From positions 1-64,000 of the IMG/VR virus record IMGVR_UViG_3300017971_000190: a stretch of 64,000 nucleotides of DNA; one strand, written 5' to 3'. The position numbers were made by a program, and so were the translations under genes. The notes below the pieces were generated by a model, which did no database searches, was not told the origin of the DNA, and saw nothing but the letters and a program-made list of their open reading frames with translations. Shown here one piece after another: positions 1-59,211 of this stretch; position 1 is the stretch's first letter, and each line of letters starts with the position of its first letter.

Positions 1-212
1 ACAACTGAAATGTAATTGATGTTTGCCTTTGATATGGCTGAGGCCTACGTTGAGTAGGAGAGTTCTACCGGTGGGGTCGGGTACCGGGTAGACAACTGAA
101 ATGTAATTGATGTTTGCCTTTGATATGGCTGAGGCCTACGTTGAGTAGGAGAGTTCTACCGGTGGGGTCGGGTACCGGGTAGACAACTGAAATGTAATCG
201 ATGTTTGCCTTT
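1..212 (+). repeat. 91-bp tandem repeat, 2 full copies plus a 30-bp partial copy
   Basis: 1-91 equals 92-182; 183-212 repeats the first 30 nt with one mismatch; the unit contains hairpins cctac/gtagg and tctacc..ggtaga. Confidence 0.9.
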
Positions 213-213
213 C

Positions 214-333
214 GTGGGTTTACACAGACTGTGGCTCGCAGAATCTGGGGAAGTAATTGGCGGTGAAGGAAGAAAATGAGCTTGGGGCATCTGGTGAAAC
301 ATCCAGACCGACTTTAACTGCCCGCCAACCCAC
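214..333 (+). ncRNA. Unidentified ~120-nt structured RNA, copy 1 (family A)
   Basis: Closed by gtggg/cccac; shares cagactgtggctcgcagaatctg and other blocks with 1307-1426; compensatory helix ttggcgg/ccgccaa. Confidence 0.75.
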
Positions 334-341
334 ATAATTTT

Positions 342-432
342 TGAGGGGCTGATGACGGTCAGAGATTGCGACTTTAAACCACAAGTCGCTAGAATTAATA
401 ACTGTGGGTTCGAGTCCCACCCCCTCGTTCCA
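342..432 (+). tRNA. Aberrant tRNA-like RNA (10-nt anticodon-position loop containing CTTTAAA)
   Basis: Acceptor tgagggg/cccctcg, T-arm gtggg-TTCGAGT-cccac, encoded CCA; helix gcgact/agtcgc has a 10-nt loop. Confidence 0.5.
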
Positions 433-716
433 GCAAGTTCCTAGAACATCTAAGAAGCTGTGATTGTATTGGGTCAGTGGCCTGTGCAGTACACAGTGGA
501 GACGGTTCGTTTAAGGAACGAGCTGCCTTTAGTCGAGATCCCGCGTTGGCGACTAGAGGGTTGGCAGTACCAATGCAGGGGTGCGAGGTGGGTAAGTCGG
601 TCTGGTAGATTTTACCTGTTTGTAATCCAGCGACACCACTTCAATAAATGGGACTAACAGGTCTCAACCATCTTTCGTTGTCACAAGTCGGTTGAGTATT
701 CACAAGATGACAACTA

Positions 717-781
717 GGAGTGAGGACACTAGCTTGAGTGCTTCAACGGTTTCGGCTCAAGTCCATAGCCCTTCTCCGAAA
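717..781 (+). ncRNA. Stem-loop/pseudoknot element (cttgag..ctcaag family)
   Basis: Stem 733-738/756-761; loop tttcgg complementary to downstream ccgaaa 776-781. Confidence 0.4.
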
Positions 782-966
782 AATTGATTGAAAACCGTTT
801 ACGCCTACACGGAGTTGGGGGTTCTACAGTTGTAGGAAGAGCTTAAAAACCCAAAGTAACAGGTGGGGCTACCGGGATGTATCTTTCCCTTTCAGTGTAA
901 GCCTGTTGCGGTAGGGAGAGTGGTGGACACGCTTGCCCCAACCCTCTACCCGAATTTTTCGTTTTT

Positions 967-1233
967 GGTAAATGGAAGGTTGGCCTAAAAGCAGCCATCC
1001 TTTAAAGAGTGAGGCGAAGACCTGTTGCTCGGATTTTTGCTGTGAGAGGCTTGGGTACGGTTAATCTCACAGGTTCCACGCGAGTCAAAAACGTAAAGTC
1101 GCTTTTTACGTAAATAGATTTGGGAGTGGCTCTCCCTAGCGTGCTGAAACAGGAGTACTTTCGGTTAAGTGAGGAGGCACCCCGGAGACGGTAAGGCCGA
1201 ATCCCTCTTTGGCGTAGCAGCACACCATTTACC
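967..1233 (+). ncRNA. 23S rRNA GTPase-associated centre (H43-H44, L11-binding domain) mimic with a 201-nt insertion
   Basis: 975-1010 + 1212-1225 align without gaps to E. coli 23S 1055-1104 (GAAGGTTGGCCTAAAAGCAGCCATCCTTTAAAGAGT|GCGTAGCAGCACAC); closed by a 9-bp stem ggtaaatgg/ccatttacc. Confidence 0.85.
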
Positions 1234-1306
1234 TTTTTCAGCCCCGTACCAAGTGTCCTATGGAGTTCGGGTTTAAATACTCCTCTTGGTACGCATTTTC
1301 AACCTT

Positions 1307-1426
1307 GTGGGTGTACTCAGACTGTGGCTCGCAGAATCTGAGGCAGTAATTGGTAAGAGATGAAGCTAATGAGCTTGACACCTGTAAAATAAGTTGCAGG
1401 GTGACTAAAACTGCTTACCAGCCCAC
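1307..1426 (+). ncRNA. Unidentified ~120-nt structured RNA, copy 2 (family A)
   Basis: Paralog of 214-333; helix changed to tggtaag/cttacca; closed by gtggg/cccac and followed by a T-run. Confidence 0.75.
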
Positions 1427-1514
1427 ATTTTTTGAGTTGCCCCCTAAGCACTGGTCTAACGATCCTGCTTAGGTGATCGGGGAGTGGATGGTACCTGAAG
1501 CTCCCCACTTTTTT

Positions 1515-1601
1515 GGAAGATGAACGGGAAGGCCGGGCATTAGTGCACAGTGTCGTACCGGTTCGACTCCGGTTTGGAAATCCAAGTTCTTGGCATCTTC
1601 C
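1515..1601 (+). ncRNA. tRNA-like RNA with T-arm but rearranged architecture
   Basis: 8-bp closing stem ggaagatg/catcttcc; T-arm accgg-TTCGACT-ccggt followed by an extra hairpin ttgga/tccaa before the 3' strand. Confidence 0.5.
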
Positions 1602-1708
1602 TTGAAAAACCGCCAGAGGAATTACACGTTATAATCTGGCCTCTACAGAGAGTAAAAAATGTGAGGTTGTGAGTGCTTTTCCAAAAACTCTCACCCGACA
1701 TAAGTTGG

Positions 1709-1804
1709 ATTTAGTGTCTTGTGCAGTCATAGATGGGAGGCGTTGAACTCTGGTCACCAGGTTGGAGGGAGCCAACAGTGAAATACCATCCATTGGCATT
1801 AAAT
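1709..1804 (+). ncRNA. 23S rRNA L1 stalk (H76-H78) mimic
   Basis: TGTGCAGTCATAGATGGGAGGCGTTGAA...GGAGCCAACAGTGAAATACCATCC matches 23S ~2109-2179 (UGUGUAGGAUAGGUGGGAGGCUUUGAA...GGAGCCGACCUUGAAAUACCACCC); 10-bp H76-like stem atttagtgtc/ggcattaaat. Confidence 0.85.
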
Positions 1805-1982
1805 TGTATAAATACAACAATTTGTGTTGGGTAATTTTCAGTTGCAACCCCTGGGTTCTGAGGTATTTGCCGGTAGCCTGCAGAACAGGGAAGTCCCGTA
1901 GCCGGATGGGTTTGGTAGTAGAACCTCTGACCCTTTTAATTGAGTCAGTAGCTGTACACTAAGAAAAAACTACCACTTTTTC

Positions 1983-2050
1983 GGAGCCTGTAATTTAAAT
2001 GGAAAAAGAAGCGTTAGCCTATTTCTAGGCTCGAATCCTAGCAGGTTCCT
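1983..2050 (+). tRNA. Degenerate tRNA-like RNA (8-bp acceptor, CTCGAAT T-loop)
   Basis: ggagcctg/caggttcc plus ctagg-CTCGAAT-cctag; D and anticodon arms weak. Confidence 0.4.
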
Positions 2051-2192
2051 TAAAGGGTGTAGTCTCCCTCCTGGGGAAACATTTCCTGGGTTATTTGGCC
2101 ATAAAAGACTACAACGCAAATCGAAAGTGCTTGTTGAATTGATTTGTGTAATCCGAACAAGCAGTTGTGAGTGCTTCTATAAACTCTCATTT

Positions 2193-2296
2193 GTGAGGTT
2201 CCTGGTTGTCCAAGGATGTAAACAGGTGAGTGCTTGGGTGTGTATTCTCGCTCAAGACTGGGCAGGCGAATTGACGCTAGCGAAGCTTGGCCTCAC
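2193..2296 (+). ncRNA. Closed structured RNA
   Basis: gtgagg/cctcac closing stem, internal cttggg/ctcaag stem, followed by a T-run. Confidence 0.4.
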
Positions 2297-2304
2297 ATTT
2301 TTAA

Positions 2305-2414
2305 TCCCTATGATAGAGGATCTACTGATCATTCTAGAACGGTCGGTTGGCAGAAAAAGCTTGTTGGACCCAACTTGTTTTTCTGTTGTCCTGGTTCGAT
2401 CCCAGGATGGGGAA
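2305..2414 (+). tRNA. Aberrant tRNA-like RNA with a very long variable arm and TTCTAGAA loop
   Basis: Acceptor tccctat/atgggga; D-arm taga-gga-tcta; 6-bp stem ctgatc/ggtcgg with a 10-nt loop; variable arm cagaaaaa/tttttctg; T-arm cctgg-TTCGATC-ccagg. Confidence 0.55.
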
Positions 2415-2451
2415 CTAAAGCACTTGGTTGTGAGTGATTCCTAAAACTCTC

Positions 2452-2575
2452 GGTTGTTGGTATACCAGGGTACTAACAATCTTAACACCTGGAAAAGCGT
2501 TTTGGTAGTTATCGTCAATAAATTGCTCTACTTGAGTGACGCCGGGCTCTCCTCAAGTGGTAAAACCCGGCAACC
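2452..2575 (+). ncRNA. Structured RNA with H-type pseudoknot
   Basis: ggttg/caacc ends; stem cttgag 2531/ctcaag 2552; loop gccggg 2541 pairs with cccggc 2566. Confidence 0.55.
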
Positions 2576-2587
2576 TTTTTATTTTTC

Positions 2588-2616
2588 TTGACTTCCTTCT
2601 TTTAGCACAGCATAAT
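2588..2616 (+). promoter_or_regulatory. Sigma70-like promoter
   Basis: TTGACT-17-CATAAT upstream of the ORF at 2649. Confidence 0.55.
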
Positions 2617-2648
2617 AATTGGTGTTAAACAGCTAAAAGGAGTCACAA

Positions 2649-3140
2649 ATGGTGCAGCAACACAAAATCCGAGAAGGCGTCCCCTACACCGATGGTAAAT
2701 CCATCAGAGTTATTGTTGATACTGAAGCTGGGAGTTTTGAGAACGGCACACCCGTGTATTATAGAACCACCCGAGACCTTTTCAAGGAAGTACACGAATG
2801 CTCTTTGGGAGCGTTTGCTCGGTGGGCAACACTGCAACACGAAGAGCTGTCAGATCAAATCGTACTGGCTATTCGCCCAAATAACGGAGCAGATGTTCTC
2901 CCAGACAATCTAGAAACCAGGGTGACAAGGATTTTGAAGACCGAGATTCTGAAAATTGAAGCCGGTTTGGGAACCGTTTCTTTTAATAAAAACGTAATTC
3001 CAGCCAAACTGCTGAGACAGTTGATTCAGGATTACGAAACACTCTACGGCTCAGAAACGCTTAATATCGAAGTAGTTTTCAGTCTTTTCCTTGACGGTGC
3101 GGTGGACCGCACGGAATTCCGGTTTAAGTCTGAACAATAA
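2649..3140 (+). CDS. Hypothetical protein (163 aa)
   Basis: ORF with SD aaaaggag. Confidence 0.75.
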   Translation: MVQQHKIREGVPYTDGKSIRVIVDTEAGSFENGTPVYYRTTRDLFKEVHECSLGAFARWATLQHEELSDQIVLAIRPNNGADVLPDNLETRVTRILKTEILKIEAGLGTVSFNKNVIPAKLLRQLIQDYETLYGSETLNIEVVFSLFLDGAVDRTEFRFKSEQ

Positions 3141-3230
3141 AGGGAGTTCGAGCTAGCGCTTCTTCCTGAGGGGCTTTGGTCCTGAAAATTCTAGCACACA
3201 CACGCTTTTATCAAGAAAGGAGATAGGATT

Positions 3231-3266
3231 ATGAAGCGCATTCCTGTTAACCTAATCAACCTCTAA
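3231..3266 (+). CDS. Putative 11-aa mini-peptide MKRIPVNLINL
   Basis: Strong SD aaaggag upstream of ATG. Confidence 0.3.
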   Translation: MKRIPVNLINL

Positions 3267-3297
3267 CCCTCCCACTTAAAGCTGAGTTAGCACTCAG

Positions 3298-3368
3298 GTC
3301 CGGTTGGTGGACGTACCAGAGGAAGTATTCTGTGTTCGTTGGTACCGACACAGGGTATTAAACCGGAC
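3298..3368 (+). ncRNA. Closed structured RNA
   Basis: gtccggtt/aaccggac stem; internal tattctgtgt/acacagggta helix. Confidence 0.45.
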
Positions 3369-3372
3369 ATCT

Positions 3373-3444
3373 GGCCCCATCGTTCAATGGTTAGGACACA
3401 GGATTTTCATTCCTGAGATCGGGTTTCGACTACCCGTGGGGTCA
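3373..3444 (+). tRNA. tRNA-Glu(TTC)
   Basis: Cloverleaf; anticodon arm cagga-ttTTCat-tcctg; T-stem has T53-A61. Confidence 0.9.
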
Positions 3445-3474
3445 ATAAACTATTAAAAGAAAGGTCATACTACA

Positions 3475-3663
3475 ATGGTGGAAAAGGAAAACAGTTTCTA
3501 CAAAGAACAATTTTCTATTTTGCAAAGGCGTCTTCGTGGTTCCATAGAAGAAGCAAAGAAGGAAGGAGACACGAAGAGAGAGATTGCTCTTCTGAGGGTA
3601 GGTTGTGACGTTGCGAACATTTTGAAGGGTGTGAACATAAATTACAACCCTCCTGGTTACTAA
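3475..3663 (+). CDS. Hypothetical protein (62 aa)
   Basis: ORF with SD aaagg between tRNAs. Confidence 0.6.
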   Translation: MVEKENSFYKEQFSILQRRLRGSIEEAKKEGDTKREIALLRVGCDVANILKGVNINYNPPGY

Positions 3664-3670
3664 AAGTTTA

Positions 3671-3743
3671 GGGCTCGTCGTCTAATTGGTAAGGCTCCAA
3701 GCTCATAACTTGGTCATTCGGGTTTCGATCACCCGCGAGCCCA
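3671..3743 (+). tRNA. tRNA with CAT anticodon (Met or Ile2)
   Basis: Cloverleaf; ccaag-ctCATaa-cttgg; G1-C72 paired, so not an initiator; T53-A61. Confidence 0.88.
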
Positions 3744-3826
3744 CTATGTTACTGACTACCTGAGACCGCAGCTCAAAGGTTAGTAGCAGAACACCTCAAT
3801 TAAGTGACGGTAGAACACTGAGGTGT

Positions 3827-3988
3827 GTGCAAGCAGGTACTACCGGGAAACTATTTTCTACCCTGTAACCACGTAGTTCCGAGGAGCACAAAAGAATGAT
3901 CCACCTTTTGTCCCTACCTGGAACTTAGCGTAGTTTCCCGCGTCTTTGGCGAAAGCCGTACTGCGTTGAGGATCAAACCTGCTTGCAC
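3827..3988 (+). ncRNA. ~160-nt multi-helix structured RNA
   Basis: 12-bp closing stem gtgcaagcaggt/acctgcttgcac; nested cgggaaacta/tagtttcccg, agttcc/ggaact, acaaaag/cttttgt, ggc-GAAA-gcc. Confidence 0.65.
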
Positions 3989-4000
3989 TTTTTCTTTTTT

Positions 4001-4082
4001 GCCCACATGGTGGAACAGGTAGACACGCGAATTTTAGGTGTTCGTGGCTAACGCCGTGGGAGTTCGAGTCTCTCTGTGGGCA
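4001..4082 (+). tRNA. tRNA-Leu(TAG)
   Basis: Class II cloverleaf; cgaat-ttTAGgt-gttcg; variable arm; A73. Confidence 0.92.
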
Positions 4083-4217
4083 CTAGGTCATTCTAATTTT
4101 AAGTCCTGGTAATGGTGCTAGGCAAACGTGACAAGCTTTCCATCCTTCACGTTCGAGAAAAGTTAGAATGACCTTAAATTTGTTGGGAGTTTGAGCTAAA
4201 CAAAAGAGGTACTTAAA

Positions 4218-4550
4218 ATGATTTTCACCTATGAGATAAAACGTCACAGTGTGGATTTCCTTTTCGAGGACGGCAGCTTTCATTCAATAGTGGTGGGACA
4301 AGGGCCTGGTTACTGGTACCGAATCATTTCAAAATTGAGAGAGTTGGGAAAAGAGATAAATCCGGAAGACTTTGACCAGGGTATAGAACGTCTATACTAC
4401 GATTACGCCACCGAGGAACTGAGAGGAAAAACAGAAAAGCAGAAAGAATTGGGATACTTTACCTGTCCCCAGTGCAACGTGATTTATCCTTGTCGTTCTT
4501 TCAAATATCAAAATCCTTGCGACAACTGTCGTTATGTAAAAATTACCTAG
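4218..4550 (+). CDS. Hypothetical protein, C-terminal CxxC..CxxC Zn ribbon
   Basis: ORF with SD gaggt. Confidence 0.7.
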   Translation: MIFTYEIKRHSVDFLFEDGSFHSIVVGQGPGYWYRIISKLRELGKEINPEDFDQGIERLYYDYATEELRGKTEKQKELGYFTCPQCNVIYPCRSFKYQNPCDNCRYVKIT

Positions 4551-4639
4551 TCACTTCGTGGTTAGGAGTGGGGCAATGGAATTGAGAAACCCCCTAGAGG
4601 TTATTGGGCAAAAAAGAAAGCAGGAAAGATAGATTAATA

Positions 4640-4700
4640 GTTCACATGGTAGTTTAGGTACCAGCGGGAAACCGTGTAGGTTCGAGTCCTACTGTGGGCA
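4640..4700 (+). tRNA. D-armless 61-nt derivative of tRNA-Leu(TAG)
   Basis: Acceptor gttcaca/tgtgggc, TTTAGGT retained, variable hairpin gcgg/ccgt, T-arm gtagg-TTCGAGT-cctac; the 3' end matches that of 4001-4082. Confidence 0.65.
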
Positions 4701-4703
4701 CTA

Positions 4704-4874
4704 GTTGGTAGTTCTGGGAGACCTTGGTGAAACACTCCATGGGAACCCACGGTAAAAACGAGACGTGGTAGGTTGTGTAGGTAACTACAGAGCCCTTCTA
4801 TCTAGTTACTCCTTGAGGGTAACGGGGGTAGTCGGATCTTGTTTTTAGAAACAAGGCCCACCTGAACTACCAAC
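4704..4874 (+). ncRNA. ~170-nt structured RNA
   Basis: 11-bp closing stem gttggtagttc/gaactaccaac with several internal hairpins. Confidence 0.6.
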
Positions 4875-5059
4875 AACTTCTTCCTAAGCACTTCGTGTTT
4901 GGGAGTGGGGCACTGGCATTTTAAAGTCCAACTCCATGTGGTTAGGGCAAACCAGTTCAAGACTTGGGCCTTTTGGCTAGCCCAGATGTATTTCTGATTG
5001 CCGACAAGTTACAGGCTGGTTGATACCAATTACCACGAAAGAAAGAGCTAGCCACTATG

Positions 5060-5144
5060 GGAAGGATGACCGAGCGGCTGAAGGTACACGCCTGCTAAGC
5101 GTGCGTAGGGAAACCTACCGAGGGTTCGAATCCCTCTCCTTCCG
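5060..5144 (+). tRNA. tRNA-Ser(GCT)
   Basis: Class II cloverleaf; cacgc-ctGCTaa-gcgtg; G73. Confidence 0.95.
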
Positions 5145-5248
5145 ACGCAGTTGGCCCCGCTGCACATCCTATCGAGAATAATTACCACAGATGTGTGTAC
5201 ACAAAGATGCTAGGATCTTTATTTGTGGTGGTTATTCTAGGGGCAATT

Positions 5249-5378
5249 GGCAGAGTGGCGAAACGAAAAGAGGCCCATACTAGTTAACCTCTTTCTTTGG
5301 TAAACGCGCGGTAACTCCGTGATTGGTCAATCAGTTAACTGGTTCACTATCTTCCAGGTTCAAATCCTGGCTCTGTCA
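5249..5378 (+). tRNA. tRNA-like RNA with a hairpin inserted in the D-loop and a degenerate anticodon arm
   Basis: ggcagag/ctctgtc; Leu/Ser-type D-arm tggcgaaac..tggtaaacgc split by aaagagg/cctcttt; T-arm ccagg-TTCAAAT-cctgg. Confidence 0.55.
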
Positions 5379-5461
5379 AGATGCTATCGCATACACTGCC
5401 TTCAAAAAGTGTATTGACAAATTAAAAAATGTTGTCACAAGACTACTAGGAGGTATTAATC

Positions 5462-5632
5462 ATGGAAAGACTTATTTATCGCTTTATTCCTAACGTTGAG
5501 ACCTTAATTGAGCAATACGAGTTGGAAGGTTTCGAGGTGCGGGGATACAGTGAGTACAGTTCTGACGGGATTCCTAGGGTGGCTGAGATGGTCAAGTGGG
5601 TTTCTGATAAACCGTCTCAAGAAAAGGAATGA
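5462..5632 (+). CDS. Hypothetical protein (56 aa; below the ORF-track cutoff)
   Basis: SD aggaggt, ATG..TGA open frame. Confidence 0.65.
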   Translation: MERLIYRFIPNVETLIEQYELEGFEVRGYSEYSSDGIPRVAEMVKWVSDKPSQEKE

Positions 5633-5657
5633 TTTTTGATTTTCTTCTCTTTCTTTT

Positions 5658-5732
5658 CGGGGAATAACTCAGTCTGGTAGAGTGCCTGCTTTGGGAGCAG
5701 GAAGTTCGCAGGTTCGAATCCTGTTTCCCCGA
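5658..5732 (+). tRNA. tRNA-Pro(TGG)
   Basis: Cloverleaf; C1-G72; cctgc-ttTGGga-gcagg. Confidence 0.95.
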
Positions 5733-5798
5733 TTAAGTTTATTTTTCAAAGTACACGAAAAATAAACTACCTCACTGGTACAGAGGTTAAAGTACTGT

Positions 5799-5959
5799 GG
5801 ACAAGTGTTGTGCAGAGGGTAGCACAGAGAGTAAGCTAACGAAAAGCGAAACCTGCCGTGCGAGAAGAGCAGGTCCACGGTGTAATCGGAATGCCTCTAG
5901 TGTGGTGCACCACAGCTAGTTTTAATGCCAATGAGAGGTTCGATTCCTCTCCTTGTCCA
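5799..5959 (+). ncRNA. tRNA-like termini enclosing a ~125-nt pseudoknotted insert
   Basis: ggacaag/cttgtcc plus T-arm gagagg-TTCGATT-cctctc; acctgc/gcaggt stem whose loop ccgtg pairs with cacgg. Confidence 0.55.
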
Positions 5960-5981
5960 AATGTTGGGTTGGTACTTTACC

Positions 5982-6180
5982 AACGACAACAGCTTTCTTC
6001 GGGAGCCCGGAAGAAAGGCTTAACCAGCGCCAGTGAGCTTCAATGGGTCGTGCACACACCGCGTTGAAGATGACTCTGGGGTAGTAGGAAGGTGCACAGA
6101 ACGGCAAACTAGGCTTTTCCTAGGTTGGCTTCTAGGCACCGATCCCTCCTTCAGTGGTGTGTGGGGCTTGGTTGTTCGTT
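5982..6180 (+). ncRNA. ~200-nt structured RNA with GTGCAC loop
   Basis: acgacaac/gttgttcgt ends; agctttcttc/gaagaaaggct hairpin; cttcaa/ttgaag stem; gtgcac at 6050 and 6092. Confidence 0.5.
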
Positions 6181-6219
6181 CACACAGGGCTCAATTTTAA
6201 AAATTATTAAAGGTGAAAA

Positions 6220-6417
6220 ATGAAGCTAACTAAAAAACAAGAAAAATTGGTAAAAGAGGTTATTGGAGACGGCACCGATTTTCCAAAATTTACAAACGAC
6301 CCTTATGTTAATCACAGAGTAGACATGCTTGTTTGTGACTGTCCACCTTGGGAGGAGTTGAGTAAGGAAGAGCAAGATTTGTATTTTGAGGAAGTAGAAG
6401 CTTCTAAAATGGAATAA
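6220..6417 (+). CDS. Hypothetical protein (65 aa)
   Basis: ORF with SD aaggtg. Confidence 0.65.
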   Translation: MKLTKKQEKLVKEVIGDGTDFPKFTNDPYVNHRVDMLVCDCPPWEELSKEEQDLYFEEVEASKME

Positions 6418-6438
6418 TTATTAATAGTATTGTTTCTT

Positions 6439-6510
6439 TGAGGCGTAGGCAAACGGTAAGCCACGAATTTTTGGTGTTCGGCATTGGAGGTTCGAATCCT
6501 CCCGCCTCAA
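6439..6510 (+). tRNA. tRNA-Gln(TTG)
   Basis: Cloverleaf; T1-A72; cgaat-ttTTGgt-gttcg. Confidence 0.88.
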
Positions 6511-6512
6511 AA

Positions 6513-6662
6513 ATGAAAAAAGAAAAACCTTTGAAGGATTTACTGCCGAATCCATGTTGTTGCAGTTTTCCCATGGAACCATTGAAAGTAACAAAACCAC
6601 TTAGAGAAAAATTGTGGAAGTGTCTCAAGTGTGGTAAGTTGATCTATAAATACAAAAACTAG
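6513..6662 (+). CDS. Small Cys-rich hypothetical protein (49 aa)
   Basis: ATG after tRNA-Gln; CC..CxxC. Confidence 0.45.
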   Translation: MKKEKPLKDLLPNPCCCSFPMEPLKVTKPLREKLWKCLKCGKLIYKYKN

Positions 6663-6665
6663 TGC

Positions 6666-6755
6666 GGAGTGTATAGTGTTTAAATGGCAACACGGCTAGT
6701 GGCTAACGGGTCATACCTGCCAGGCAAAAGTGGGTTCAAATCCTGCAACACTCCA
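6666..6755 (+). tRNA. Degenerate tRNA-like RNA
   Basis: ggagtgt/acactcc, D-arm gtgtt/aacac, TTCAAAT loop; anticodon arm poorly paired. Confidence 0.4.
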
Positions 6756-6824
6756 TATAATGTTTAGCGAGAGACAAGCAGTTGGGCTCTCGTGGCGACT
6801 TTGTAGAGGGTGTACAATTTTTCT

Positions 6825-6897
6825 GGGCGATTAACTCAGTTGGCAGAGTGCAATCTTTACGCGGTTGAAGTCACAGGTTCAAACCCTGTATCGCCCA
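6825..6897 (+). tRNA. tRNA-Val(TAC)
   Basis: Cloverleaf; caatc-ttTACgc-ggttg. Confidence 0.9.
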
Positions 6898-6905
6898 AAA
6901 AGAAG

Positions 6906-6934
6906 TTGACTTTACCACTACTCTGTGTTAGCCT
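6906..6934 (+). promoter_or_regulatory. Sigma70-like promoter
   Basis: TTGACT-17-TAGCCT with TG upstream of the -10. Confidence 0.45.
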
Positions 6935-7072
6935 TTTCTTAATCCGTGAGAGATCAGGCTCAACTGCTCTCACGGGGTTGTCAACGGGGTGGGCCAATCC
7001 CCTGACGGCGGGAGCTGCGTTTCCTTTTGGAAGCAGTCTCCCGTTTTAATTTTAGAAAGGAAACAAAGCACC

Positions 7073-7273
7073 ATGGTAGAAGAAAAAGAAACCTACGAAG
7101 CTATCAATTTTGGTTGGGACGGTGATGATTTTGTAACCGAAGATGTTACAGGCAAAATTCGTCGCTATCACGGTGCCAAAATTACCGACGTTAAGCGAGA
7201 GTGTTCTGTGGAAGTTCAAGACGGTAAAGTGATTGGACACTTTTCGTTTCAATTACCGAAAAAGAAAGGCTAA
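7073..7273 (+). CDS. Hypothetical protein
   Basis: SD aaagg; start re-assigned to ATG 7073. Confidence 0.65.
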   Translation: MVEEKETYEAINFGWDGDDFVTEDVTGKIRRYHGAKITDVKRECSVEVQDGKVIGHFSFQLPKKKG

Positions 7274-7277
7274 GAGA

Positions 7278-7565
7278 ATGACTATGGTAAAAGAACACGA
7301 ACTTAAGTATGGGGTAGATGGTTGCCTCTTAACCTGGCAAAACCCTTTTCCTGAAGAAGTAACCTGTGCTTGTTGTGGAAAAGAAGGTGCACGTTTAGCT
7401 TTTGTTCTACAAGAATCAGGCAAAAAGGAGCACGCTTGTAATTTATATCAAAACGATCCGGATGGAGAGGGATTTTGGGTGCACGATTCAGCTGCTTTTG
7501 CAGTTTATTTGTGCAGAGATATTAATTGCCCTGAAAAAGCTACCGCTAAGTGGAATCAAGCTTAA
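7278..7565 (+). CDS. Hypothetical Cys-containing protein
   Basis: ORF directly after the previous gene. Confidence 0.65.
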   Translation: MTMVKEHELKYGVDGCLLTWQNPFPEEVTCACCGKEGARLAFVLQESGKKEHACNLYQNDPDGEGFWVHDSAAFAVYLCRDINCPEKATAKWNQA

Positions 7566-7574
7566 AATATTTTT

Positions 7575-7647
7575 GGGTCCTTAGCTCAGCTGGTAGAGCA
7601 CCGGACTTTTAATCCGTAGGTCTTCGGTTCAAACCCGAAAGGACTCA
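7575..7647 (+). tRNA. tRNA-Lys(TTT)
   Basis: Cloverleaf; ccgga-ctTTTaa-tccgt. Confidence 0.92.
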
Positions 7648-7699
7648 TTAGTTCACCCATCAGAATAGTAAGTTTTAAGGAGAAAGATCATGAAGAAGA

Positions 7700-8377
7700 T
7701 TGTGCCTTCAAATTGTTGTAAACAGAATCAAGTATTTAAACTTAAACGAAAGAAGAACTGTTTTGAAAACATACCCAAGTATGGTTTATCCTCCCTTTGG
7801 AGGATTGAAGGAGTACCTTCACACCTTTGCTAAGTTGGACGGCAGCAATCTCAGATTTGAATGGAGCAAGAAAAAAGGTTGGTACAAAGTTGGAACCCGG
7901 CATCGTCTTGTAGACGAAAGTGATTCTATTTTTGGAAAAGCTCCCCTTATTTTTCAAGAAACTTTGGCTGACCAGTGCGAGAAAATTTGTAGAGATAATC
8001 GTTGGCAGAGAGCTGTGATTTTCTGCGAGTACTATGGACCACAAAGCTTTGCTGGCCTGCATGAAATTGGAGGTACGATGACGCTAACGGTTATAGACGT
8101 AGCTCCTTACAAAAAAGGCATTTTACCACCTACTGATTTTCTAAAACTGTTTGGAGAATTAGGGCCGCATTACCTGGGATACTTGAAGTGGAATTTTAAT
8201 TTCATAAATCGAGTTCATCAGGGTTTAGAGCCTGAAGCTAGTTTTGAAGGAGTAGTTGGTAAAGCTAAAGGGAAAGGAAATACACTACTTCTCTACAAAA
8301 CCAAAACTCAAGCCTGGAAAGATGAAGTTAAAAAACGATACAGTAAGAAGGAAGCAGAAAAAATAATTCATAGCTAA
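7700..8377 (+). CDS. ATP-dependent RNA ligase (Rnl2-like nucleotidyltransferase)
   Basis: Motifs KLDGSN (I), FCEYYG (III), FEGVV (IV), YKTK (V). Confidence 0.75.
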   Translation: MCLQIVVNRIKYLNLNERRTVLKTYPSMVYPPFGGLKEYLHTFAKLDGSNLRFEWSKKKGWYKVGTRHRLVDESDSIFGKAPLIFQETLADQCEKICRDNRWQRAVIFCEYYGPQSFAGLHEIGGTMTLTVIDVAPYKKGILPPTDFLKLFGELGPHYLGYLKWNFNFINRVHQGLEPEASFEGVVGKAKGKGNTLLLYKTKTQAWKDEVKKRYSKKEAEKIIHS

Positions 8378-8414
8378 GGTAAACATCGATTAACTTTTCA
8401 GAAAGGAAAGCCCT

Positions 8415-8651
8415 ATGTCTATTGTGCGCAAAGCCACTGTTAAGGGTGAAGTGGAAACACCCGCGTGTGAAAAGTGTGGAGAACCCCTAAAGCTGGGTAC
8501 ACGAAAACCCGTTTTTAACCCTTTTCACGAGGGAGCCAAAAAACTAGGCAACGGGTTAATTTGTGAGACCCCCGTTGCTCATGATTATTGGTTTTCCCCT
8601 TGTTCGCATTGCACACCTCCTCATGTAGTAATTAGAAAATTGGTATGCTGA
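8415..8651 (+). CDS. Hypothetical Zn-binding protein
   Basis: CxxC..CxxC; SD. Confidence 0.6.
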   Translation: MSIVRKATVKGEVETPACEKCGEPLKLGTRKPVFNPFHEGAKKLGNGLICETPVAHDYWFSPCSHCTPPHVVIRKLVC

Positions 8652-8652
8652 T

Positions 8653-8946
8653 TTGTCTTCCCGCCGCACCACCAAAAAAGAAAAACATCAGGCCATTTTT
8701 CTTGGTCTCTACACCAATGAAACTGGTTCTGATGTTGTCTACGTTTGGGAAGTTTGTAACGATCTCAAACCTGTTAAAGATTTTGCTGTTTGCTACACCC
8801 CTATTGTTAAAAATGGTAAGATGCTTCGTGGTACTTTTGAACGCATAGCTGATTGGAAAGGGTTTCCTTATTACGGCGGTCAGGAAGAATTTCTAAAACA
8901 TTTTCCTCATAGAGTGGAAAAAATTAAAATAGAGTTTGAGGAGTAG
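8653..8946 (+). CDS. Hypothetical protein, GLYT..G..VYV domain family
   Basis: Similar to both halves of 10125-10562. Confidence 0.65.
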   Translation: MSSRRTTKKEKHQAIFLGLYTNETGSDVVYVWEVCNDLKPVKDFAVCYTPIVKNGKMLRGTFERIADWKGFPYYGGQEEFLKHFPHRVEKIKIEFEE

Positions 8947-8951
8947 TTGTT

Positions 8952-9395
8952 TTGGCTCATCAATTAAATTGGCCTAGTATCAAGTATTTTCTTAAAGATT
9001 ACCTACTAGCTTTGGTCTACGAAGACTACAAACGGTGGCCTTATTGTTGTCAGGGTTTTCTTAAAAAAGAAAGCTACAGTGACTTTTTTTCTGGATTCAA
9101 GACTATTCTAACTAAAGGCTACGTGCCTTATGAAATTAGTGATCTTTGTGATCATCTTGCTCCTTTAATTCTTCCACGTCTCCAACGATTCAGAAAAGTT
9201 GTCTACAGTCATCCGGCTGATATGACTTTCGAAGAGTGGGAAGAAAAATTGGACAAAATGCTCTTTTCTTTTCAATTTGTTGTAGATAGAAGAGGCGATG
9301 ATGTTGGAGCTGACGACGAGAGTACGGCTACGCACAGTCAAGTAGAAGAAGGTTTTCAACTTTTTGGTGCTTATTTTCGCCACCTTTGGCTTTGA
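8952..9395 (+). CDS. Hypothetical protein
   Basis: 147-aa ORF in gene string. Confidence 0.65.
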   Translation: MAHQLNWPSIKYFLKDYLLALVYEDYKRWPYCCQGFLKKESYSDFFSGFKTILTKGYVPYEISDLCDHLAPLILPRLQRFRKVVYSHPADMTFEEWEEKLDKMLFSFQFVVDRRGDDVGADDESTATHSQVEEGFQLFGAYFRHLWL

Positions 9396-11303: not shown

Positions 11304-11627
11304 GTGTGTTATTTTCAGGACATTGCTGTAAAAAAAGTTGTAGTAGAAGTCATTTCCGAGCTGGTGGGAAAGCGTAAGCGCTTCACCGGTTGGGAAGTGA
11401 ATCAAAAATTACAAAACCGCAAAGGCTTTGCTCACCTTCCCCCACCCTGGCAGATCAGCTCCTATGTACGGGAACTGTTTAATGGGCATAACAGTGCTTT
11501 TTCAGGTTATGCCTGTTATCCAGTTGATGGAGGCCCCTTGCTCTATTTCCCAATTCCGTACTATGTGAGAAATCATGTCGAAAAAATCCAAAAAGAAATC
11601 CAAACGGAAGGCCAAACCGAAAAGTAA
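11304..11627 (+). CDS. Hypothetical protein
   Basis: SD aaagg, GTG start. Confidence 0.6.
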   Translation: MCYFQDIAVKKVVVEVISELVGKRKRFTGWEVNQKLQNRKGFAHLPPPWQISSYVRELFNGHNSAFSGYACYPVDGGPLLYFPIPYYVRNHVEKIQKEIQTEGQTEK

Positions 11628-12426
11628 CCCTTCTGTTTCGATGCCCAGTGTTCAGGAACTTTTTGGTTCCAGTTGTCGTTATCGCCTTAGCAGTTCTTTT
11701 CGTGGACCTCAATTAGAAGGTTACGAATTCTTATGTGCTTTCGAAAACAAAGTACACTCTTACCACACCCCCACAATGCAGAAGCTTGGCAATATTAAAC
11801 AAGCTTGGCATGGTACCAATAAGGCTGCACTTAAAAGCATTGCTGTGGATGGATTACTCACGCCTTTTCAGCGTCGAAAGCGAGATCGCTGGACTAGCAT
11901 ACACGGTATGTTTGGACCAGGAATTTATTTAGCTCCTAACATTGAAAAAGCGGCTATGTTCGCATGGCAGCATAAGCATTTGAAGTTTGTTCTTCAATGC
12001 TATGTTGCTTTGGGAAAACCTCATTTTGCTACTCAAACAGGAAACTATTACGAAACAGCTGAAATGGAAGACAAGCATAGTGTCATAGGTGGAAGAGGAT
12101 CACTGACTGGAGCTTGGGGTGGTAGACTCTTAAACGAAGAGTGGGTAATTTTCGATAATCAACAAGCTACTGTAGACATGGTACTCGTGTACAGATGCGT
12201 GGAAACTCCTAAGGCTACCCCATTTCGAGGCTCGATTGGACGACGATTTTATAACAGTAGTAGAGAACCACAAGGTGTTGTTCGTTACCACCCTTGCAAA
12301 CGAAATGGCAAGCTTTGTCGCAATGCTTTTGGCTCTGGTGGCTGTGTGGAAAAAGGTATAACTACTGGAGCGAGTGCCTTTTCAGATTACTGCAGAGATT
12401 ATCAAGTATCCTTGATTCACAAATAA
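11575..12426 (+). CDS. PARP-like (H-Y-E class) ADP-ribosyltransferase domain protein
   Basis: WHGT, GMFGPGIYLA, VALGK, NEEWVIF motifs. Confidence 0.8.
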   Translation: MSKKSKKKSKRKAKPKSNPSVSMPSVQELFGSSCRYRLSSSFRGPQLEGYEFLCAFENKVHSYHTPTMQKLGNIKQAWHGTNKAALKSIAVDGLLTPFQRRKRDRWTSIHGMFGPGIYLAPNIEKAAMFAWQHKHLKFVLQCYVALGKPHFATQTGNYYETAEMEDKHSVIGGRGSLTGAWGGRLLNEEWVIFDNQQATVDMVLVYRCVETPKATPFRGSIGRRFYNSSREPQGVVRYHPCKRNGKLCRNAFGSGGCVEKGITTGASAFSDYCRDYQVSLIHK

Positions 12427-58521: not shown

Positions 58522-59145
58522 ATGACAGGAAAATTAATTGCATTTGAGGGGGCTGATGAAAGTGGGACCACCACACAAGTGAAAGCTGTGGCTGACTACT
58601 TCTCTGGAAAGTTAGAAAAACCAGTACATACTACTTTTGAGCCTTCCTCTTTTCCAATAGGAAAAGTTATTAAAAGTTGGTTGCGAAAAGAGCTACCTCG
58701 TCCTAGTGAGAGAGTGCTAGCCACTTCGTTTATGGTGGACAGATTGCACCATTGGGAAAGTCAAATTAAGCCAATACTGATGGATGGTAGACACGTATTT
58801 ACAGATCGTTTTAGTCTTTCTACTTTTGTGTACCAAAGTGTTAAGCAACCTTTAAAGTGGTTGCAAAAGCTGGATTATTTTCTAGGAGTTCCATTTCCAG
58901 ATTTGACTTTGATTTTAGATCTTCCTGTAGATGTAGCTTTTGAGCGCATATCTAAGCGTGGTGAAGAAAAAGAAATATATGAGGAAAAAGAGTTTCAAAA
59001 AATAGTTGCAAATGGTTATCGTACTCTTCCCTCGGAATTAGATATGCCTTATAAAATTGTTGATGTTTCTCAGTCCGAAAGGGAAGTGACAGAGGACATC
59101 ATAAGTATTCTCCAACCAATTTTGTCTTATGCCGGGATCGCATAG
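58522..59145 (+). CDS. tmk: Thymidylate (dNMP) kinase
   Basis: IAFEGADESGTTTQ P-loop variant, T.EP, DRF, PDLTLILD. Confidence 0.9.
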   Translation: MTGKLIAFEGADESGTTTQVKAVADYFSGKLEKPVHTTFEPSSFPIGKVIKSWLRKELPRPSERVLATSFMVDRLHHWESQIKPILMDGRHVFTDRFSLSTFVYQSVKQPLKWLQKLDYFLGVPFPDLTLILDLPVDVAFERISKRGEEKEIYEEKEFQKIVANGYRTLPSELDMPYKIVDVSQSEREVTEDIISILQPILSYAGIA

Positions 59146-59211
59146 CGGTCGAGTGCACCACTCTTGTAAGGTGGAATTTAAACGTCGTAGGTTCGAATCC
59201 TACTCCCGGCT
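59131..59211 (+). tRNA. tRNA-Thr(TGT) with enlarged variable region
   Basis: gccggga/tcccggc; ccact-ctTGTaa-ggtgg; T-arm gtagg-TTCGAAT-cctac. Confidence 0.8.

What the first reader, a model, noticed from the sequence alone, without database searches (positions are those of the whole stretch)
4640..4700. 61-nt D-armless paralog of the phage's own tRNA-Leu(TAG)
It retains the acceptor 3' strand, A73, the T-arm, a variable hairpin and TTTAGGT. The D-arm is deleted, and a new tggt/acca stem was gained that re-closes the anticodon hairpin. That repair argues for function. LeuRS identity relies on A73 and shape rather than the anticodon, so it could be a charged or decoy mini-tRNA.
Basis: partly seen in the sequence, partly recalled or inferred. 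Interest (0 to 1): 0.6.

Follow-up and report, generated by a model that had tools for sequence, protein, structure and literature searches.

The report
D-armless remnant of a tRNA-Leu gene
A 61-base piece of a large phage's tRNA gene cluster is a leucine tRNA gene that has lost its D arm; it still folds neatly, but it most likely cannot be charged or decode, and nothing here shows it has a job of its own.

Summary
Window 4640-4700 (+) is a 61-nt tRNA-derived element. It has a 7-bp acceptor stem (two G·U pairs), A73, a canonical T arm, a short variable hairpin with a GAAA loop and the motif TTTAGGT. It has no D arm. It folds into a closed four-helix junction of 21 pairs with no mismatch.

- The "new" TGGT/ACCA stem needs no repair by selection. 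ACCAG is an ordinary 3' anticodon-stem strand of tRNA-Leu genes. Its natural partner CTGGT contains the same TGGT as tRNA positions 8-11, so deleting the D arm re-closes the hairpin by itself.
- The phage's own tRNA-Leu(TAG) is not its closest relative (44/61 identical). A tRNA-Leu(TAG) from an unrelated phage contig scores 50/61, though by a more gap-permissive alignment.
- Charging by LeuRS is unlikely. Bacterial LeuRS needs A73 plus D-loop/T-loop tertiary elements, and the anticodon and variable arms are dispensable. The element keeps the dispensable parts and lacks the essential one.
- The re-closed 7-nt loop puts UUA, not UAG, in the anticodon position. The genome uses the standard code, with TAA its commonest stop.

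I found no ortholog, but the close relatives' DNA could not be read. Most likely this is a deletion remnant that is still cut out by RNase P. A selected role as a tRNA mimic is not excluded.

The parts
4640..4646 (+). Acceptor-stem 5' strand (GTTCACA)
   Evidence: Pairs with 4693-4699. The two C-to-T differences from tRNA-Leu keep G·U pairs.
4647..4663 (+). Anticodon-like hairpin: 5-bp stem TGGTA/TACCA and 7-nt loop GTTTAGG. The old loop letters TTTAGGT lie at 4653-4659.
   Evidence: Minimum-energy and centroid fold. The register is shifted by one base, so UUA and not UAG sits in the anticodon position.
4664..4675 (+). Variable-arm hairpin, 4 bp with a GAAA tetraloop
4676..4692 (+). T arm: GTAGG / TTCGAGT / CCTAC
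   Evidence: The T loop is identical to that of tRNA-Leu. Three stem pairs differ on both sides and stay paired.
4693..4700 (+). Acceptor-stem 3' strand plus discriminator A73. No CCA is encoded; CTAG follows, as it does after tRNA-Leu.
   Evidence: family D5/D6.
4001..4083 (+). Canonical tRNA-Leu(TAG), the comparator
   Evidence: ARAGORN; Rfam 46.9 bits.
4218..4550 (+). Small ORF (110 aa, two CxxC pairs, good Shine-Dalgarno site) that ends 89 nt upstream of the element. It is an ORFan.
4546..4583 (+). Repeat D1a. By eye it forms a 9-bp hairpin with a UUC loop. The second copy is at 4883-4920 (84% identical), and by eye its differences keep the pairing.
   Evidence: Only two copies exist in the genome.
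4605..4619 (+). 15-nt perfect inverted copy of 3991-4005, which is the leader plus the first 5 nt of tRNA-Leu
   Evidence: I12. It marks local rearrangement, or a possible long-range RNA helix.
4701..4880 (+). Structured domain directly 3' of the element, closed by an 11-bp stem (4704-4726 / 4852-4874)
   Evidence: -67.7 kcal/mol, z = -3.7, 0 of 200 shuffles fold as well. No Rfam match.

Best explanation
The element is what remains of a second tRNA-Leu(UAG)-type gene in the phage's tRNA cluster, after one or two internal deletions removed the D arm and the 5' anticodon-stem strand.

The letters TGGT or GGT occur at tRNA positions 8-11, in the D loop (GGTAG), and in the usual tRNA-Leu 5' anticodon-stem strand CTGGT. 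Because of this, the deletion left TGGT(A) next to the old loop and opposite the old 3' strand ACCAG. The hairpin closed by itself and a tidy four-helix junction resulted.

Inferred from established enzymology, not shown here: the element is co-transcribed with the (+)-strand cluster. It keeps an intact acceptor/T-arm minihelix, so RNase P should cut at 4639/4640 and the host CCA-adding enzyme should tail it.

It is not expected to be leucylated or to decode. Any role it has would be passive. It could act as a processing mark between the mRNA of ORF 4218-4550 and the structured RNA at 4701-4880.
For: - The anatomy and fold are confirmed.
- ACCAG is an ordinary tRNA-Leu strand. CTGGT is the commonest 5' strand among 54 distinct tRNA-Leu genes (6 of 54), partnered by ACCAG (2), GCCAG (3) or TCCAG (1), and this includes tRNA-Leu(tag) genes. 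TGGT at positions 8-11 is shared by the element and by 11 of the 54 genes.
- The own tRNA-Leu is not the closest relative. The structure-preserving differences (8 stem changes with all 12 pairs kept, simulated P about 5e-4; no change in 19 loop positions, P about 0.005) therefore reflect two functional tRNA-Leu lineages. They are not evidence of selection after the deletion.
- LeuRS needs the D-loop elements that are missing (PMC9976931).
- The genome uses the standard code and TAA is the commonest stop (98 of 173 long ORFs). A UUA anticodon would therefore be harmful.
- There are signs of local rearrangement: an inverted 15-nt copy of the tRNA-Leu leader 21 nt upstream, the flanks do not otherwise align, and the adjacent ORF has no homolog among 5.8 billion proteins.
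- No ortholog turned up in 1.1 Mb of related or tRNA-rich phage loci, in IMG/VR or in GTDB genomes.
- Another short uncalled tRNA remnant exists in an unrelated phage cluster (L055 2355-2408).
Against: - The element shows no decay at all: 21 of 21 pairs are intact, the T loop is canonical and A73 is kept. Either the deletion is recent or the element is maintained.
- The simple TGGT-to-TGGT slip predicts CATGGT followed directly by TTTAGGT. The sequence has two extra bases (AG). A second event, or a breakpoint in the D-loop GGTAG, must be assumed.
- The surrounding 8 kb is rich in other well-formed, uncalled tRNA-like elements. One of them (6666-6755) is conserved with covariation in a distant phage, so this lineage does keep non-canonical tRNA-like RNAs.
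- In 6 of 8 cases a small ORF in the cluster ends 3-89 nt before the next tRNA or tRNA-like 5' end. This element is one of those cases. That would fit a selected punctuation role.
Confidence: 0.55

Rival explanations
1. A selected, non-decoding tRNA mimic. The D-armless RNA is excised by RNase P, gets a CCA tail and accumulates. It then acts as a decoy or competitor for a host nuclease or other factor that recognises the tRNA-Leu(UAG) anticodon loop or the acceptor/T minihelix. Alternatively it is an obligatory processing handle for the neighbouring mRNA and the 171-nt structured RNA.
For: - The junction is perfect and the loops are intact.
- The cluster lies beside an RNA-ligase-family gene (7781-8377). 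The window protein matches PF09414 at only 16.3 bits (E 0.011, below the cut-off of 27), its homologs reach 27.9 bits, and the KxDGSN, EGVVxK and KxKT motifs are present. Homologs of this gene sit next to tRNA clusters in many phage contigs. In some they sit beside Ro60/TROVE, Thg1 and RtcB, which is a context of tRNA damage and repair.
- Another non-canonical tRNA-like element of the same cluster is conserved with covariation.
- ORFs in the cluster are regularly followed closely by a tRNA or tRNA-like element.
- Phage tRNAs are known to counter anticodon nucleases (PMC10264068, PMC11555353).
Against: - No ortholog, no expression data and no known nuclease partner.
- The stem that looked like an adaptive repair is explained without selection.
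- The loop register is shifted by one base relative to a real anticodon loop.
- The adjacent ORF is lineage-specific.
Confidence: 0.3
2. A working D-armless tRNA. It would be charged (with leucine or another amino acid) and used on the ribosome. It would read either CUN codons through UAG in a 9-nt loop, or UAA through UUA in the 7-nt loop, as an ochre suppressor.
For: - A73, a 12-bp acceptor/T helix and a 7-nt loop with U at the second position and a purine at the sixth.
- D-armless tRNAs do function in animal mitochondria (my own knowledge).
Against: - Bacterial LeuRS determinants in the D loop are absent.
- There is no linker between the acceptor and anticodon stems, so an L shape is doubtful (inference).
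- The loop starts with G at position 32.
- The genome shows no recoding, and TAA is its main stop.
- The Rfam tRNA score is below the gathering score. ARAGORN does not call it, even in mitochondrial mode.
Confidence: 0.04
3. An attachment-site relic. The phage would carry the 3' part of a host tRNA-Leu gene as an integration site, or it would be a displaced gene end left by an inserted element.
For: - Integrative elements typically carry a tRNA 3' part that runs from the anticodon loop to the end (PMC9897764, on tRNA gene fragments).
- The stretch from TTTAGGT to the 3' end is contiguous tRNA sequence.
Against: - The element also keeps the 5' acceptor strand and positions 8-11, so it is an internal deletion and not a 3' fragment.
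- The 25-nt T-arm plus acceptor string has no exact match in 185,579 species genomes.
- The neighbouring ORFs scanned against Pfam (2649-3140, 4218-4550, 7233-7565, 7781-8377 and others) gave no integrase domain.
Confidence: 0.03

Closest known systems
tRNA gene fragments and pseudogenes in prokaryotic and phage genomes (van der Gulik et al. 2023, PMC9897764)
   Same: A partial, non-canonical tRNA-derived sequence beside intact tRNA genes. Standard callers miss it or score it low.
   Different: Those fragments are mostly 5' or 3' ends produced by integration or by CRISPR activity. This one is an internal deletion that keeps both ends and closes into a four-helix junction.
D-armless mitochondrial tRNAs of animals, such as tRNA-Ser(AGY) and nematode tRNAs
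   Same: Acceptor, anticodon and T arms are present and the D arm is missing.
   Different: [quoted passage not shown] This element has no linker and a type-II variable hairpin. It sits in a phage of a host presumed bacterial. ARAGORN's mitochondrial mode does not call it.
mascRNA / MEN-beta tRNA-like small RNAs (Rfam RF01684)
   Same: A tRNA-like RNA of about 61 nt whose main known property is recognition by RNase P, RNase Z and the CCA-adding enzyme. It serves as a processing signal for a neighbouring transcript and is not aminoacylated (my own knowledge).
   Different: Those are eukaryotic. There is no sequence or model match here at E up to 5. Processing of this element has not been shown.
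RNAC and RNAD, the small stable RNAs encoded in the phage T4 tRNA gene cluster
   Same: Non-tRNA small RNAs transcribed from within a phage tRNA cluster, of unknown role (PMC3014915).
   Different: No sequence relation was tested or is expected. The T4 RNAs are known to be expressed, and this element is not.
Minimal E. coli tRNA-Leu substrates (Larkin et al. 2002, as reviewed in PMC9976931)
   Same: Truncated tRNA-Leu molecules with A73.
   Different: The active minimal substrates lack the anticodon and variable arms but keep the D/T-loop interaction. This element is the reverse case.

Membership tests
Canonical bacterial tRNA (Rfam RF00005) | Score at or above the family's gathering score (29 bits) | tested here: not met
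   20.1 bits, E = 1.7. The eight true tRNAs of the cluster score 46.9-68.3 bits.
Canonical bacterial tRNA (Rfam RF00005) | D arm with G18G19 able to contact the T loop | tested here: not met
   A 19-nt gap covers the D arm. The fold has no D arm. ARAGORN makes no call.
Canonical bacterial tRNA (Rfam RF00005) | 7-bp acceptor stem, 5-bp T stem and a T loop of the form TTCRANY | tested here: met
tRNA-Leu identity set (bacterial LeuRS) | Discriminator A73 | tested here: met
   A at 4700.
tRNA-Leu identity set (bacterial LeuRS) | A15-U48, G18G19, A20a and the D/T-loop tertiary contacts | tested here: not met
   The D loop is absent. The requirement is taken from PMC9976931.
D-armless mitochondrial-type tRNA | Recognised by a detector of D-replacement-loop tRNAs | tested here: not met
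   ARAGORN run with -mt, -mtx, -mtd and -mt -ps did not report 4640-4700.
mascRNA/menRNA (RF01684), bacterial Y RNA YrlA (RF02553), tmRNA | Match to the covariance model or a detector call | tested here: not met
   There is no such match at E up to 5 in 2500-9000. ARAGORN finds no tmRNA. The genome has no TROVE/Ro60 gene and no Y-RNA motif.
Suppressor tRNA of a recoded phage | The genome shows in-frame use of the matching stop codon | tested here: not met
   The standard code gives 89% ORF coverage. TAA is the commonest stop of long ORFs.
RNase P / CCA-adding enzyme substrate (minihelix class) | Cleavage at the 5' end and CCA addition | not testable with these tools
   Only the structural prerequisite, a 12-bp acceptor/T helix with a T loop, is met.

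The most novel reading that the evidence does not exclude
The element is a maintained D-armless tRNA mimic. It would be one of a set of non-canonical tRNA-like RNAs that phages with RNA-ligase-linked tRNA islands keep alongside their real tRNAs. It would be excised by RNase P and CCA-tailed. It would then serve as a decoy for a defence nuclease directed at tRNA-Leu(UAG), or as the processing handle of the adjacent 171-nt structured RNA.
Probability: 0.25. Interest if true: 0.7.

Novelty: new member of a known kind. Interest (0 to 1): 0.3.

Why it matters
If it is only a deletion remnant, its value is as a clean example. It shows how repeated GGT/TGGT letters inside tRNA-Leu let a D-arm deletion heal into a perfect junction that looks designed. 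That is a warning against reading such tidiness as selection.

If it is maintained, it would be the first D-armless tRNA mimic in a phage. It would add to the current picture of phage tRNAs as tools against tRNA-cleaving defences.

The wider region may deserve more attention than the element itself. It is an 8-kb low-coding array of tRNAs, small zinc-ribbon-like ORFs and at least five other uncalled tRNA-like RNAs, next to an RNA-ligase-family gene. One of those RNAs is conserved in a phage that encodes Ro60.

Tried and rejected
Ortholog hunt:
- The exact 22-mer of the hairpin gave nothing in IMG/VR.
- The T-loop plus acceptor pattern with a free T stem found 18 IMG/VR loci. 16 are full-length tRNAs, mostly tRNA-Leu, and 2 look like chance matches.
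- The 25-mer gave nothing in GTDB genomes.
- A covariance model of the element (R1) was run over 1.06 Mb of loci and then over L106-L110 with filters off. It matched only full tRNAs or parts of larger tRNA-like RNAs.
- blastn of window 1-8400 against all held loci matched only canonical tRNAs, the element at 6694-6743 and the ligase gene. The finding's 3' end matched only a tRNA-Leu gene.

Relatives:
- Nothing close exists in INPHARED.
- The topoisomerase protein and the adjacent ORF found no close relative in IMG/VR.
- The adjacent ORF has no homolog at all.
- Three other assemblies of the same phage are identical over 10.4 kb, so they show no polymorphism.
- Ligase relatives at 80-90% identity exist (P0003, P0004). 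One sits on a 1-kb contig and the others could not be delivered as DNA.

Ideas rejected:
- Ochre suppressor.
- Y-RNA module.
- tmRNA.
- attP relic.
- Coding on either strand: no ORF of 40 aa or more overlaps 4640-4700.
- Sigma-70 promoter and terminator scans were not above shuffles.

Full report
**Setting.** The window is the first 64 kb of a single 221,679-bp phage contig. The contig is JGI Ga0180438_10000059 and CheckV rates it 63% complete. The genome is 39% G+C and uses the standard code. Most of its large proteins have no PHROG family.

Positions 1-8400 have low coding density. All features there lie on the + strand. They are eight canonical tRNAs (Glu, Met, Leu-TAG, Ser, Pro, Gln, Val, Lys), several small ORFs with Shine-Dalgarno sites, and long structured spacers.

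**The observation.**
- It has a 7-bp acceptor stem. The two differences from tRNA-Leu are C-to-T changes that keep G·U pairs.
- A73 is present.
- The T arm has a T loop identical to that of tRNA-Leu. Three stem pairs are changed on both sides.
- A 4-bp variable hairpin carries a GAAA loop.
- The letters TTTAGGT are present.
- There is no D arm. The alignment with tRNA-Leu shows one 19-nt gap.
- On its own and within 346 nt of context it folds into a closed four-helix junction. That junction has 21 pairs, no mismatch and no unpaired junction base.

The element is not a chance resemblance. The local alignment with tRNA-Leu beats all 500 shuffles. The Rfam tRNA model aligns over its full length at 20.1 bits, which is below the gathering score of 29. 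ARAGORN does not call it in any mode.

**Where the stem comes from.**
- CTGGT is the commonest 5' strand (6 of 54 genes).
- Its partners are ACCAG (2), GCCAG (3) and TCCAG (1). These include tRNA-Leu(tag) genes.
- The element's ACCAG is therefore an ordinary tRNA-Leu strand.
- Its natural partner contains TGGT. The same four letters stand at tRNA positions 8-11 in the element, in the own tRNA-Leu and in 11 of the 54 genes.
- GGTAG is also the usual D-loop core in this family.

Removing the D arm from such a gene therefore places TGGT(A) opposite (T)ACCA automatically. No new mutation is needed, and the repeats themselves favour deletion by slippage.

One detail does not fit. A single TGGT-to-TGGT slip would give TGGT followed directly by TTTAGGT, but two extra bases (AG) are present. 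That requires either a second event or a breakpoint in the D-loop GGTAG.

**Relation to the phage's own tRNA-Leu.**
- The two share the acceptor sequence, the anticodon-loop letters, the T loop and the trailer CTAG.
- All five anticodon-stem pairs and three T-stem pairs differ, and identity is 44/61.
- A tRNA-Leu(tag) of an unrelated IMG/VR contig (L008) reaches 50/61 by a more gap-permissive alignment. It also scores higher than the own gene with a covariance model of the element, 44.7 against 33.9 bits.
- The acceptor and the 5' sequence are common to many phage tRNA-Leu genes.

The ancestor was therefore a second, distinct tRNA-Leu(UAG)-type gene, not a recent copy of the present one.

This affects how the substitution pattern should be read. 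Eight stem differences keep all 12 pairs (simulated P about 5e-4). There is no difference in 19 loop positions (P about 0.005). That is the signature of two working tRNA lineages diverging under constraint. It says nothing about selection after the D arm was lost.

**Could it be charged or decode?**
- In E. coli, LeuRS needs A73 together with A15-U48, G18G19, A20a and the D/T-loop contacts. Constructs without the anticodon arm and the variable arm remain active (PMC9976931). The element keeps the dispensable arms and lacks the required ones.
- In the stable fold the loop is GTTTAGG. That puts UUA, an ochre anticodon, in the anticodon position.
- The genome shows no recoding, and TAA is its commonest stop (98 of 173 long ORFs).
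- There is no linker between the acceptor stem and the hairpin, so an L shape is doubtful. This last point is inference.

**What it probably still does.** The acceptor/T-arm minihelix is intact. From established knowledge of RNase P and of CCA-adding enzymes, which accept minihelices, the element should be cut at its 5' end and tailed. None of the phage's tRNA genes inspected (Glu, Met, Leu) encodes CCA.

In the cluster, small ORFs end 3-89 nt before the next tRNA or tRNA-like 5' end in 6 of 8 cases. ORF 4218-4550 is followed by this element. A passive punctuation role is therefore plausible, but it has not been shown.

**Conservation.** I found no ortholog. The searches were:
- exact and degenerate patterns in IMG/VR;
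- a 25-mer in GTDB genomes;
- a covariance model over about 1.1 Mb of related or tRNA-rich phage loci;
- blastn of window 1-8400 against all held loci.

The test is weak, for three reasons.
- Three other assemblies of the same phage are identical.
- The nearest relatives whose DNA I could read share only 56-66% identity in the neighbouring ligase protein.
- The relatives at 80-90% identity could not be delivered as DNA.

The adjacent ORF has no homolog among 5.8 billion proteins. A 15-nt perfect inverted copy of the tRNA-Leu leader lies 21 nt upstream of the element. Apart from one repeated hairpin element, the flanks of the element and of tRNA-Leu cannot be aligned. The segment looks rearranged and lineage-specific.

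**Context that keeps a functional reading open.**
- The same 8 kb holds at least five further uncalled tRNA-like elements with 7-bp acceptor stems and canonical T arms. They lie at 342-428, 2305-2414, 5249-5378, 5799-5958 and 6666-6755.
- The last of these has an ortholog in a Logan contig (L107). The two share a nearly invariant 32-nt core, and their acceptor and T stems covary.
- In L107 that ortholog lies among other tRNA-like RNAs and three Y-RNA-like modules. These sit upstream of genes for Ro60/TROVE, PARG, the ligase and Thg1.
- The gene at 7781-8377 belongs to the RNA-ligase family. It carries the KxDGSN, EGVVxK and KxKT motifs. PF09414 scores 16.3 bits for the window protein, which is below the cut-off of 27, and up to 27.9 bits for homologs.
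- Homologs of this gene sit beside tRNA clusters in many phage contigs.
- This phage contig has no TROVE, Thg1, RtcB or CCA-adding gene and no Y-RNA motif.

**Verdict.**
The element is a D-armless derivative of a tRNA-Leu(UAG)-type gene. The "repair" argument fails, close paralogy with the own gene is doubtful, and charging is unlikely.
- Most likely (0.55) it is a deletion remnant that is still processed and has no shown function of its own.
- A maintained tRNA mimic, acting as decoy or processing handle, remains possible (0.3).
- A working tRNA is unlikely (0.04), as is an attachment-site relic (0.03).

Noticed in passing
window 6666-6755; L107 4177-4263: An uncalled 90-nt tRNA-like RNA with acceptor, D and T arms and an odd central region. 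It is conserved in a distant phage (ligase 66% identical). The 32-nt core at window 6694-6725 is identical apart from 2 nt, and 4 pairs in the acceptor and T stems change on both sides and stay paired. In L107 it lies among Y-RNA-like modules upstream of a Ro60/TROVE gene. No other member turned up in 1.09 Mb of loci or in IMG/VR.
   Followed up: partly
window 342-428, 2305-2414, 5249-5378, 5799-5958: Four more uncalled tRNA-like elements of 87, 110, 130 and 160 nt. Each has a 7-bp acceptor stem and a canonical T arm around large inserts. 342-428 weakly matches tRNA-Sec (23 bits, E 0.24). 5799-5958 has a D arm, a 6-bp T stem and an insert of about 100 nt.
   Followed up: partly
window 7781-8377; genome 89787-90251: A divergent RNA-ligase-family gene lies directly after the tRNA cluster. 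Its homologs sit next to tRNA clusters in many phage contigs, and in some they sit beside Ro60, PARG, Thg1 or RtcB. A second, clearer RNA ligase (PF09414, 101 bits) lies elsewhere in the genome.
   Followed up: partly
L107 3640-4460: A phage contig encodes a Ro60/TROVE protein. Upstream of that gene lie three modules that by eye carry the Y-RNA hallmarks (GGACCGAAG, GGGTTATC, CAACTTGTTC), interleaved with tRNA-like RNAs. Rfam gives weak YrlA, sbRNA and mascRNA hits there.
   Followed up: partly
window 4546-4583 and 4883-4920: A 38-nt repeat (84% identical) with only two copies in the genome. By eye it forms a 9-bp hairpin with a UUC loop, and the differences between the copies keep the pairing. 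One copy lies upstream of the finding and the other upstream of tRNA-Ser.
   Followed up: partly
window 3991-4005 and 4605-4619: A perfect 15-nt inverted repeat. One arm is the leader plus the first 5 nt of tRNA-Leu. The other arm lies 21 nt upstream of the finding, and the match extends with a 7-nt gap. It is either a rearrangement scar or a long-range RNA helix.
   Followed up: no
window 4084-4176 and 4701-4880: Strongly structured spacers lie directly 3' of tRNA-Leu (z = -5.1) and of the finding (z = -3.7). Neither matches an Rfam family.
   Followed up: no
window 3475-7565: The cluster holds small ORFs with Shine-Dalgarno sites, several of them with CxxC pairs (4218-4550, 6513-6662, 7279-7565). 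In 6 of 8 cases an ORF ends 3-89 nt before the next tRNA or tRNA-like 5' end. This resembles tRNA punctuation of a polycistronic transcript.
   Followed up: partly
window 1-212: A 91-bp tandem repeat of 2.3 copies (99% matches) lies at the contig start. Other assemblies of the same phage differ from the window only there.
   Followed up: no
window 11575-12426: An ORF carries a poly(ADP-ribose) polymerase catalytic domain (PF00644, 49 bits). The related phage L106 has a PARG gene beside its ligase.
   Followed up: no
window 59131-59211: A tRNA-Thr(TGT) of 81 nt, unusually long for this isotype. It stands alone, far from the cluster.
   Followed up: no
L055 2355-2408: Another short (54-nt) uncalled tRNA remnant, with an intact acceptor stem and a 4-bp T stem, in an unrelated phage tRNA cluster.
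   Followed up: no
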